A DNA stretch of 64,000 bases from Isurus oxyrinchus (lineage: Eukaryota): the NCBI GenBank assembly GCA_026770705.1, contig JANJGN010000071.1:124001-188000 (forward strand). Reading direction: 5' to 3'. Below are positions 57,341-57,457 of the stretch, piece by piece. The translations under genes were made by a program, and so were the position numbers. Position 1 is the stretch's first letter. Every line of letters starts with the position of its first letter. Below the pieces are notes generated by a model. The model ran no database searches and was not told where the DNA came from. It was given only the letters and a program-made list of their open reading frames with translations.

Positions 57341-57457
57341 GGCTCCTTGCTGCAGCGCCAGAAGAGAATGGACAGACAGCAGCTCTGCAGATTCTGCTGT
57401 AACTGCTGTAATTGGAGAGGACCAAATGAGACTTGTGGTCTCTGCTGTAGATATTAG
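57341..57457 (+). CDS. HAMP: Hepcidin exon 3 (furin site + mature 8-Cys peptide)
   Basis: Acceptor gcttttccag; GSLLQRQKR|MDRQQLCRFCCNCCNWRGPNETCGLCCRY*; hepcidin cysteine pattern C-x2-CC-x-CC-xn-C-G-x-CC. Confidence 0.93.
   Translation, partial: GSLLQRQKRMDRQQLCRFCCNCCNWRGPNETCGLCCRY

What the first reader, a model, noticed from the sequence alone, without database searches (positions are those of the whole stretch)
57368..57454. Atypical mature hepcidin: no His3/aromatic ferroportin-binding N-terminus, and a doubled hairpin loop with an N-glycosylation sequon
Seen: the N-terminus is MDRQQL (6 residues before Cys1, as in human). The loop between Cys5 and Cys6 is NWRGPNET (8 aa versus 4 in human HRSK) and contains N-E-T; net charge is about +2. 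Established: the DTHFP/QSHLS N-terminus with His3 mediates metal and ferroportin binding in HAMP1-type peptides, while teleost HAMP2 peptides lacking it are mainly antimicrobial. Inference: this is either an antimicrobial-type or ancestral hepcidin, or it co-evolved with a divergent ferroportin.
Basis: partly seen in the sequence, partly recalled or inferred. Interest (0 to 1): 0.8.

Follow-up and report, generated by a model that had tools for sequence, protein, structure and literature searches.

The report
Diverged long-loop shark hepcidin gene copy
This is a real, spliced and transcribed shark gene for a hepcidin-type peptide that lacks the iron hormone's usual receptor-binding start; its long loop is also found in a normal-looking shark hepcidin and the same animal seems to make a standard form too, so it is most likely an extra defence-type copy.

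Summary
Window 57368-57454 encodes a 29-residue, 8-cysteine peptide behind an RQKR furin site. It has no His3, an 8-residue Cys5-Cys6 loop carrying N-E-T, and net charge +2.

It is the last exon of an intact three-exon hepcidin gene:
- Exon 3 scores 31.8 bits on Pfam Hepcidin, against a cut-off of 27.
- Both introns are removed at GT..AG in contigs of two runs of the same species.

Two of the three "atypical" features turn out to be less special:
- **Long loop.** Both Heptranchias perlo hepcidins have the same 8-residue loop, including one with a human-like xTHxPIC start. The loop is a shark trait and does not mark lost function.
- **Sequon.** N-E-T is not conserved; Heptranchias has R-I-T.
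- **N-terminus.** The loss of His3 is specific to this paralogue. One contig of the same species runs from the shared pro-region into S-H-L-S-I-C-M-Y-C-C, a HAMP1-type start.

Best reading: a fast-diverging extra copy that works like teleost HAMP2, meaning host defence and no ferroportin control. Function is untested. "Ancestral" or "only" hepcidin is not supported.

Earlier notes of this scan report many near-identical copies elsewhere in this genome. Interest is moderate.

The parts
52871..52880 (+). GGCGCC followed at once by AGAC: a BMP-response-element-like core about 140 bases upstream of the TATA box
   Evidence: GGCGCC occurs only twice in the 64 kb, once here. Sequence match only; no function shown.
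53013..53018 (+). TATAAG, a likely TATA box
   Evidence: It lies 72 bases upstream of the start codon.
53090..53182 (+). Exon 1 coding part, 31 codons: start codon and signal peptide (MGSSQMKWRLVLFTLTLLLSLQLSHFFSLSR)
   Evidence: One search gives the translation; 15 of 31 identical to residues 1-31 of Heptranchias hepcidin-1; donor GTAAGC; joint 53181/2 to 54877/8, GT..AG, in 11 contigs of X1 and 2 of X2.
53183..54877 (+). Intron 1 (1695 bases), full of tandem and dispersed repeats
   Evidence: the joint skips 1695 bases, GT..AG; sequence.
54878..54934 (+). Exon 2, 19 codons of propeptide (VDTALGSSTIEKSVDSPDT)
   Evidence: One search gives the translation; 8 of 19 identical, ungapped, to Heptranchias residues 32-50; acceptor TTTTTGCAG, donor GTAGGT; joints on both sides.
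54935..57340 (+). Intron 2 (2406 bases)
   Evidence: joint 54933/4 to 57340/1, GT..AG, in 9 contigs of X1. The same joint with a T in place of C54933 (Thr to Met) appears in 1 contig of X1, 2 of X2 and 1 of X17.
57341..57457 (+). Exon 3 coding part: end of propeptide, furin site, mature peptide, stop codon TAG
   Evidence: Pfam Hepcidin 31.8 bits against cut-off 27.
57356..57367 (+). R-Q-K-R, a proprotein-convertase (furin-type) cleavage site
   Evidence: Aligned with R-E-K-R of both Heptranchias hepcidins.
57368..57454 (+). Predicted mature peptide, 29 residues, 8 Cys
57410..57433 (+). Cys5-Cys6 loop NWRGPNET (8 residues). The N-E-T sequon is at 57425-57433 and the variable base is 57420 (Gly18 or Glu18)
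   Evidence: for loop length. table 3, for 57420 G>A.
57458..57763 (+). At least the first part of the 3' untranslated region; its end was not determined
   Evidence: contig depth stays at exon level to bin 57598-57763, though that bin also holds a dispersed repeat, and falls in 57764-57900; no AATAAA before 58311.

Best explanation
The stretch is the mature-peptide part of an intact, spliced, transcribed three-exon gene of the hepcidin family in a cartilaginous fish, most likely a shark. The precursor has 88 codens in exons of 31, 19 and 38 codons, that is 88 codons in all: a signal peptide, a short propeptide, and an R-Q-K-R site where a furin-type convertase would release a 29-residue peptide held by four disulfides. 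The gene is a diverged paralogue and not the animal's only hepcidin. It keeps the cysteine frame and Leu6-Cys7-Arg8-Phe9, but His3 and the hydrophobic residue 4 are replaced by Arg and Gln. This is the segment that enters the ferroportin cavity and that teleost work ties to iron regulation. I infer that it binds ferroportin poorly or not at all. I infer that it serves as a secreted host-defence peptide (antimicrobial or immunomodulatory), as teleost HAMP2 peptides do, while a paralogue with an x-S-H-L-S-I-C start carries the iron-hormone role. The 8-residue loop is a general feature of shark hepcidins and is not part of the functional shift. Shown: the gene, the splicing, the transcription, family membership, the missing motif, the shared loop, and the concentration of paralogue differences in the mature peptide. 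Inferred: cleavage site, loss of ferroportin binding, defence function.
For: Family and gene model:
- Pfam Hepcidin scores above its curated cut-off.
- GT..AG joints lie exactly at the predicted exon borders, in 11 and 9 contigs of X1.
- Exon bins have contig depth of 1e5 to 8e5, against roughly 7e2 to 2e3 in the repeat-free intron bins of the same runs.
- The ungapped 88-residue match to Heptranchias perlo hepcidin-1 gives exon 1 15/31, exon 2 8/19 and pro-segment 7/9.

Long loop is not specific to this copy:
- H. perlo hepcidin-1 (XP_067831448.1) has WTHVPIC... plus the loop NKKGARIT.
- H. perlo hepcidin-like (XP_067831447.1) has WTDEPHC... plus NKKDARIT.
- HMMER puts a 4-residue gap in human hepcidin opposite this loop.

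Paralogue divergence sits in the mature peptide:
- The two Heptranchias proteins differ at 1 of 59 prepro positions and 8 of 29 mature positions, Fisher p = 4.6e-4. Five of the eight lie in residues 3-9.
- Window against Heptranchias: 30 of 59 prepro residues are identical, but only 4 or 5 of 21 non-Cys mature residues.

Canonical paralogue in the same species: one X1 contig fits the window up to 57370 (…Q-K-R-M). It then continues for 38 letters whose first 30 read, by my own codon reading, S-H-L-S-I-C-M-Y-C-C (table 7).

Literature, passages read:
- Type 1 fish hepcidins carry Q-S/I-H-L/I-S/A-L and regulate ferroportin; type 2 hepcidins lack it and are mainly antimicrobial (PMC8502971).
- The first nine residues reproduce hepcidin's action, and the N-terminus inserts into the ferroportin cavity (bioRxiv 10.1101/2020.03.16.993006).
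- The loop is highly variable and extracellular (PMC8235187).
- Net charge +2 equals that of sea bass hamp2, counted by eye from the sequence printed.
Against: - No functional datum exists for any shark hepcidin.
- Leu6, Cys7, Arg8 (as in sea bass hamp1) and Phe9 are retained, as is the C-terminal CGxCC part. Residual ferroportin binding is therefore possible.
- A GGCGCC+AGAC element, like the BMP-response core of HAMP promoters (that resemblance is recalled), lies about 140 bases before the TATA box. It is one of only two GGCGCC in the 64 kb. No TTCNNNGAA STAT-type site was found in 52500-53095. This hints at iron-type control and not infection-type control.
- Net charge is only +2, or +1 in the commoner Glu18 form, which is low for a membrane-active peptide.
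- The canonical paralogue rests on a single contig's overhang in a run whose RNA status is the tool's guess. Its gene was not located, and its loop was not seen.
- Tissue and condition of the runs are not given.
- Depth is summed over all near-identical copies, so expression of this particular copy is not shown separately. Only the window's G at 57420 is represented, at 13-31% of depth.
- Structure prediction gave nothing usable.
Confidence: 0.6

Rival explanations
1. It is still an iron-regulatory ligand. The peptide binds a ferroportin through the retained Leu6-Cys7-Arg8-Phe9 and C-terminal part, with the changed residues 1-5 matched to a divergent receptor surface. That receptor could be the second ferroportin gene that some cartilaginous fishes carry, which lacks the Cys326 equivalent.
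For: PMC8235187 (passage and legend of its Figure 5): Cys326 first appears in cartilaginous fish, and some of them have a second ferroportin with another residue there. A BMP-RE-like GGCGCC+AGAC lies in the promoter and no STAT-type site was found. Residues 6-9 and all eight cysteines are retained. Contig depth over the exons is very high.
Against: Positions 3 and 4 are Arg and Gln, where canonical forms have His plus a hydrophobic residue. A canonical-type paralogue appears to be expressed in the same species. Paralogue differences pile up in exactly the receptor-entering segment in two species, and non-Cys mature positions are the least conserved part (4-5 of 21). That is unlike a hormone under receptor constraint. 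No ferroportin sequence of this species was examined.
Confidence: 0.17
2. It is a recent, functionally drifting duplicate. It is one of many copies spread by segmental duplication of the Siglec-hepcidin region, and is transcribed because it inherited a strong promoter. Its mature peptide is under relaxed constraint and has no role of its own.
For: Earlier notes of this scan report many near-identical copies, a truncated copy spliced onto Siglec exons, and a copy with a damaged splice site in the same genome (not checked by me). Several coding variants coexist in the RNA contigs: W8L, R31K, T50M and G18E. Mature non-Cys residues are poorly conserved.
Against: All eight cysteines, the furin site, the reading frame and both splice sites are intact in this copy. 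A DNA contig of a related species (X10, about 97% alike over 57172-57637) covers the exon. The only difference inside the mature-peptide codons among those listed is 57420, although 376 differences were not listed. The same kind of His3-less paralogue is kept in Heptranchias.
Confidence: 0.15
3. It represents the ancestral hepcidin form, from which the His3-type iron hormones of bony vertebrates arose later.
For: Cartilaginous fishes branch first among jawed vertebrates. The CRFCCNCC core is shared with teleost peptides.
Against: A shark hepcidin with x-T-H-x-P-I-C, near-identical to the human start, exists, and an x-S-H-L-S-I-C form is seen in the window's own species. The His3 type therefore predates the split of sharks and bony vertebrates. 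The window's mature peptide is the fastest-changing part of the precursor.
Confidence: 0.03

Closest known systems
Heptranchias perlo 'hepcidin-like' XP_067831447.1 (automatic NCBI model; P0003)
   Same: 88-residue precursor that aligns without gaps. Same R-x-K-R site, 29-residue mature peptide, 8 Cys, an 8-residue Cys5-Cys6 loop ending in Thr, no His3, C-R-F-C-C after Cys1, and net charge +2.
   Different: Only 13 of 29 mature residues are identical, 5 of 21 outside the cysteines. The start is WTDEPH against MDRQQL, the loop is NKKDARIT against NWRGPNET, and there is no N-x-T sequon. Whether the two are orthologues or arose separately in each lineage is open.
Heptranchias perlo hepcidin-1 XP_067831448.1 (P0002) and human hepcidin-25 (PDB 1m4f, 2kef, 3h0t, 4qae, 6wbv)
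   Same: Pfam Hepcidin family. Same cysteine frame, six residues before Cys1, and a furin-type site. P0002 shares the 8-residue loop.
   Different: Both carry x-T-H-hydrophobic-P-I before Cys1; the window has M-D-R-Q-Q-L. The human loop has 4 residues.
Teleost type 2 hepcidins (HAMP2), e.g. sea bass hamp2 as printed in PMC8502971
   Same: Lacks the Q-S/I-H-L/I-S/A-L motif. Shares the C-R-F-C-C-N-C-C core, a P-N-x-S/T in the loop, net charge +2, and multi-copy genes with fast-changing mature peptides.
   Different: The teleost loop has 5 residues. A 2014 review states HAMP2 was found only in actinopterygians (PMC3978493). The shark copy is near-identical in its prepro part to the shark's own canonical-type paralogue. 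It is therefore not an orthologue of teleost HAMP2, only an analogue.

Membership tests
Hepcidin family (Pfam PF06446) | Profile match above the curated gathering score | tested here: met
   31.8 bits against cut-off 27, E 1.8e-07, residues 5-37 on profile positions 24-52 of 53.
Hepcidin family (Pfam PF06446) | Eight cysteines spaced C-x2-CC-x-CC-loop-C-x2-CC | tested here: met
   All eight Cys columns are invariant among the window and three Heptranchias proteins. The loop has 8 residues, against 4 in human.
Hepcidin family (Pfam PF06446) | Small three-exon gene giving signal peptide, propeptide, R-x-K/R-R site and a C-terminal mature peptide | tested here: met
   (exons of 31, 19 and 38 codons; GT..AG). 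(spliced contigs). Cleavage itself is inferred.
Hepcidin family (Pfam PF06446) | Genomic neighbourhood beside MAG/CD22-type Siglec genes, as for human HAMP (the human arrangement is recalled and comes from no call) | tested here: inconclusive
   Ig exons at 13.6-24.6 kb on the + strand hit V-set and Ig_CD22 (PF24518, 38.1 bits against 27). Orthology to MAG or CD22 was not tested.
Iron-regulatory (HAMP1-type) hepcidin | N-terminal motif Q-S/I-H-L/I-S/A-L (fish) or x-T-H-F-P-I (human) before Cys1 | tested here: not met
   M-D-R-Q-Q-L. Only position 6 (Leu) fits. The motif comes from PMC8502971 and the human sequence.
Iron-regulatory (HAMP1-type) hepcidin | Binds ferroportin and causes its internalisation or occlusion | not testable with these tools
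   Needs a peptide and cell assays.
Iron-regulatory (HAMP1-type) hepcidin | BMP/SMAD-responsive promoter | tested here: inconclusive
   GGCGCC+AGAC at 52871-52880, one of two GGCGCC in 64 kb. This is a sequence motif only.
Teleost HAMP2 clade | Orthology to actinopterygian HAMP2 genes | tested here: not met
   The prepro part is shared with the species' own canonical-type transcript. The same holds in Heptranchias, where 58 of 59 prepro residues are identical between the two types. That points to duplication or homogenisation within sharks. No tree was built, because the peptides are too short.
Teleost HAMP2 clade | Direct antimicrobial activity | not testable with these tools
   Needs MIC assays.

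The most novel reading that the evidence does not exclude
Cartilaginous fishes run two hepcidin-ferroportin pairs. The x-S/T-H hepcidin acts on the Cys326-type ferroportin. The His3-less long-loop peptides, multi-copy and highly transcribed, are ligands of the second, Cys326-less ferroportin reported in some cartilaginous fishes. That would be a second hormonal iron axis lost in bony vertebrates.
Probability: 0.07. Interest if true: 0.8.

Novelty: new member of a known kind. Interest (0 to 1): 0.4.

Why it matters
Hepcidin is the master iron hormone, and little is in print about it in sharks. My four paper searches listed no study of a shark hepcidin sequence or function among the papers shown. 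Only two mentions turned up: hepcidin was detected in nurse shark plasma (PMC9207270), and one review gives a general sentence on it.

If the reading holds, three things follow:
- Sharks split hepcidin into an iron-type and a defence-type copy, as some teleosts did. A 2014 review says the second type is confined to ray-finned fishes.
- The change in both shark species compared sits in the nine residues that enter ferroportin.
- A four-residue longer hairpin loop is compatible with a human-like N-terminus. That bears on which parts of hepcidin are free to vary.

The peptide is small enough to synthesise, so the question can be tested directly.

Tried and rejected
- **Word search.** I queried exon 3, padded with in-frame intron codons so that 31-99-residue proteins were in range. 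No candidate came back. This says little, because Cys-rich words seem not to be used.
- **Exhaustive HMMER search.** Exon 3 gave only 2 hits at E <= 0.001 among 1.84 billion representatives, both from Heptranchias. Teleost and mammalian hepcidins fell below the threshold for a 38-residue query. The absence of other shark or ray hepcidins from the list is therefore not evidence that they lack the loop.
- **Word search with P0002.** It gave 3 candidates, all Heptranchias. I left the third word search unused because it could only repeat these.
- **BLASTP of exon 2 against P0002.** No alignment was found, as the query is too short. An ungapped count gave 8 of 19.
- **AlphaFold2 on exon 3 with the 4-row alignment.** Mean pLDDT was 55.8 and the model was all-helical. 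That is meaningless for a disulfide-knotted hairpin, so I ran no fold search.
- **Second copy in the window.** Searches for a second hepcidin copy or remnant found none. The weak exon 1 hits are low-complexity L/S-rich translations.
- **'Ancestral hepcidin' and 'only hepcidin'.** Both are rejected.
- **'Doubled loop marks lost function'.** Rejected.
- **N-glycosylation.** Not testable here. The sequon is not conserved in Heptranchias and lies 9 residues from the C-terminus. From recall only: such extreme C-terminal sites are used inefficiently, and the native bass peptide with N-M-S in its loop was reported unglycosylated.
- **Supplements.** The supplementary tables of PMC9207270 may hold the nurse shark hepcidin peptide. 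Supplements were closed and I did not see them.
- **Species.** 'Shark' rests on the nearest protein relatives and on earlier notes.

Full report
**What is there**

Window 57341-57457 (+) follows a polypyrimidine tract and an AG. It translates to GSLLQRQKRMDRQQLCRFCCNCCNWRGPNETCGLCCRY and a stop.
- six residues before the first cysteine
- eight cysteines
- an 8-residue loop NWRGPNET between the fifth and sixth cysteine, with N-E-T in it
- no histidine, and net charge +2

It is the only hepcidin-like cysteine pattern in six frames of the 64 kb. No second copy or remnant of any of the three exons lies in the window. The window's N runs lie far away, between 18.7 and 44.2 kb.

**Gene model and transcription**

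Upstream I read two further exons:
- A 31-codon first exon (53090-53182) with a start codon, a hydrophobic signal-peptide core and a GTAAGC donor. A TATAAG lies 72 bases before it.
- A 19-codon second exon (54878-54934) with good acceptor and donor sites.

Each was handled apart. Pfam places exon 3 in the Hepcidin family above the curated cut-off (31.8 against 27 bits).

I laid contigs of four public runs on 52950-57900: two runs of the same species, guessed to be RNA, and two of a close relative.
- The joint 53182>54878 (GT..AG) appears in 11 contigs of X1 and 2 of X2.
- The joint 54934>57341 (GT..AG) appears in 9 contigs of X1.
- The same second joint, carrying a T for C54933, appears in 1 contig of X1, 2 of X2 and 1 of X17.
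- No such joints appear in the DNA-type run X10.
- Exon bins have contig depths of 1e5 to 8e5, against roughly 7e2 to 2e3 in repeat-free intron bins.

The gene is therefore spliced as predicted, and spliced molecules are abundant in those runs. Three limits apply. The tool warns that depth cannot rank genes. The runs' RNA status is a guess. Depth is summed over all near-identical copies.

**Variants**

Several coding differences coexist in the same species' contigs, and the relative's DNA contig carries some of them. By my codon reading, table 3, they are:
- 53112 G>T (Trp8 to Leu)
- 53181 G>A (Arg31 to Lys)
- 54933 C>T (Thr50 to Met)
- 57420 G>A (Gly18 to Glu in the loop)

At 57420 the A form holds 338705 of 489007 depth units in X1 and 147931 of 170141 in X2, and it is the only letter in X10. 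The window's exact peptide is thus the minority form. The commoner loop is NWREPNET, with net charge +1.

**Relatives**

A word search with exon 3 found nothing. An exhaustive HMMER search of 1.84 billion representatives found 2 proteins at E <= 0.001. They are isoforms of hepcidin-1 of the sevengill shark Heptranchias perlo. Their 90% cluster holds a third protein, 'hepcidin-like'.

All align to the window's exon 3 without a gap. The whole 88-residue precursor matches exon by exon: 15/31, 8/19 and 7/9 identical in the prepro parts.

The mature peptides are informative:
- Hepcidin-1 is WTHVPICLYCCGCCNKKGARITCGFCCKL.
- HMMER aligns it to human hepcidin-25 as THVPICLYCCGCCNKKGARITCGFCCK over [23 protein letters not shown].

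A shark hepcidin with an almost human N-terminus therefore carries the same 8-residue loop. The long loop is a property of shark hepcidins as seen here, in two lineages about 50% apart in the precursor. It is not a mark of the atypical copy. This fits the statement that in the ferroportin complex the hepcidin loop is highly variable and largely extracellular, while both termini are buried (PMC8235187, passage). The N-E-T sequon is R-I-T in both Heptranchias peptides. Only the threonine is shared.

**The N-terminus is what differs, and it differs between paralogues**

Heptranchias 'hepcidin-like' is WTDEPHCRFCCGCCNKKDARITCGICCKW. It has no His3 and no hydrophobic residue 4. The two Heptranchias precursors differ at 1 of 59 prepro positions and 8 of 29 mature positions (Fisher p = 4.6e-4). 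Five of the eight lie in residues 3-9.

In the window's own species, one X1 contig fits the window up to 57370 (…Q-K-R-M). It then runs on unlike it for 38 letters. The 30 printed letters read, in frame and by my own codon reading, S-H-L-S-I-C-M-Y-C-C (table 7). That matches the teleost 'iron regulatory sequence' Q-S/I-H-L/I-S/A-L (PMC8502971, passage), except at its first and last residues. It also resembles Heptranchias I-C-L-Y-C-C.

The species thus appears to express a canonical-type paralogue with the same pro-region. This rests on one contig. I could not fetch more of it, and the gene was not located.

**How it most likely works**

Shown: a secreted-precursor gene of the hepcidin family that is intact, spliced and transcribed.

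Inferred:
- Furin-type cleavage behind R-Q-K-R gives a 29-residue four-disulfide hairpin.
- The first nine residues of hepcidin suffice for its action, and the N-terminus inserts into the ferroportin cavity (bioRxiv 10.1101/2020.03.16.993006, passage). This copy has Arg and Gln where canonical forms have His and a hydrophobic residue, so I expect weak or no ferroportin control.
- Its role would then resemble that of teleost type 2 hepcidins, which lack the motif, are multi-copy and act mainly against microbes (PMC8502971; PMC3978493).
- The mature non-Cys residues are the least conserved part of the precursor: 4-5 of 21 against Heptranchias, compared with 30 of 59 in the prepro part. That pattern fits defence peptides and does not fit a hormone held by its receptor.

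**Evidence against this reading**

- Leu6, Cys7, Arg8 and Phe9 are retained.
- The charge is low, though equal to that of sea bass hamp2.
- A GGCGCC+AGAC element lies about 140 bases before the TATA box, one of two GGCGCC in the window. No TTCNNNGAA site was found in 52500-53095. This hints at BMP or iron-type control.
- No assay exists.

I put the defence-type paralogue reading at 0.6, a still-hormonal ligand at about 0.17, a drifting duplicate at about 0.15, and the ancestral reading at about 0.03.

**Surroundings**

Ig exons on the + strand at 13.6-24.6 kb hit V-set and the CD22-type first Ig domain. Earlier notes describe Siglec-type genes on both sides. Human HAMP lies beside MAG and CD22, which is recalled and comes from no call. 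The neighbourhood looks conserved, but orthology was not tested.

**Earlier findings of the scan**

The scan has met this before on other DNA of the same genome. Notes list many near-identical long-loop hepcidin copies on this piece and on others. They also list a truncated copy spliced onto Siglec exons and a copy with a damaged donor site. I did not check those loci. My own data agree with a multi-copy or polymorphic family: 28 distinct contigs of X1 carry the A at 57420, and several coding variants coexist.

**Novelty**

The gene is a hepcidin by every membership test I could run. It fails the one sequence feature that defines the iron-regulatory type. It is an analogue of teleost HAMP2 and not an orthologue.

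A close counterpart is already public as an automatic model, Heptranchias 'hepcidin-like'. My four paper searches listed no study of a shark hepcidin sequence, loop or function. I read passages of two papers they listed. One reports hepcidin among nurse shark plasma proteins (PMC9207270). The other is a general review sentence (PMC6795676). A 2014 review states that HAMP2 was found only in actinopterygians (PMC3978493). Subscription journals are largely outside the library, so a paper may exist that I could not see.

I class it as a new member of a known kind, with moderate interest.

Noticed in passing
window 56132-56286 (approximate), inside intron 2: Minor alternative joints 54933/4>56131/2 (1 contig each in X1 and X2) and 56283-6>57338-41 (1 contig in X1), both GT..AG. 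They suggest that a stretch of about 155 bases of a dispersed repeat is sometimes spliced in as an extra exon between exons 2 and 3. The effect on the reading frame was not worked out.
   Followed up: no
window 52871-52880: GGCGCC directly followed by AGAC about 140 bases before the TATA box of the hepcidin gene. It is one of only two GGCGCC in the 64 kb. No TTCNNNGAA site occurs in 52500-53095. This resembles the BMP-response core of HAMP promoters (recalled). It is also the subject of another first-stage note.
   Followed up: partly
window 13622-24624, + strand: A run of Ig-domain exons. One is a V-set exon that also hits the CD22-type first Ig domain (PF24518, 38.1 bits); the others are C2- or I-set exons, including two near-identical exons at 19645-20256 and 20845-21408. 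Together they form a Siglec-type receptor gene upstream of the hepcidin gene.
   Followed up: partly
window 53380-54100 and 54160-54460; also 56640-56880: Intron 1 holds a tandem array of units of about 60 bases (…ctccagcccctacaaccctccctatctctgtaacctc…). Both introns hold arrays of 'ggtcagtactgagggagtgctgcactgtc' units. These are very high-copy repeats in both species, with X10 depth up to 1e7.
   Followed up: no
window 57760-58100: A long TG-rich microsatellite and minisatellite lies directly behind the likely 3' untranslated region. The first AATAAA after the stop codon lies beyond it, at 58311. The true polyadenylation site is undetermined.
   Followed up: no
Heptranchias perlo proteins P0002 and P0003: At loop position 18 the canonical-type Heptranchias peptide has Gly and the His3-less one has Asp. 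The window's gene varies between Gly and Glu at the same position. This is a parallel Gly-to-acidic change of unknown meaning.
   Followed up: no
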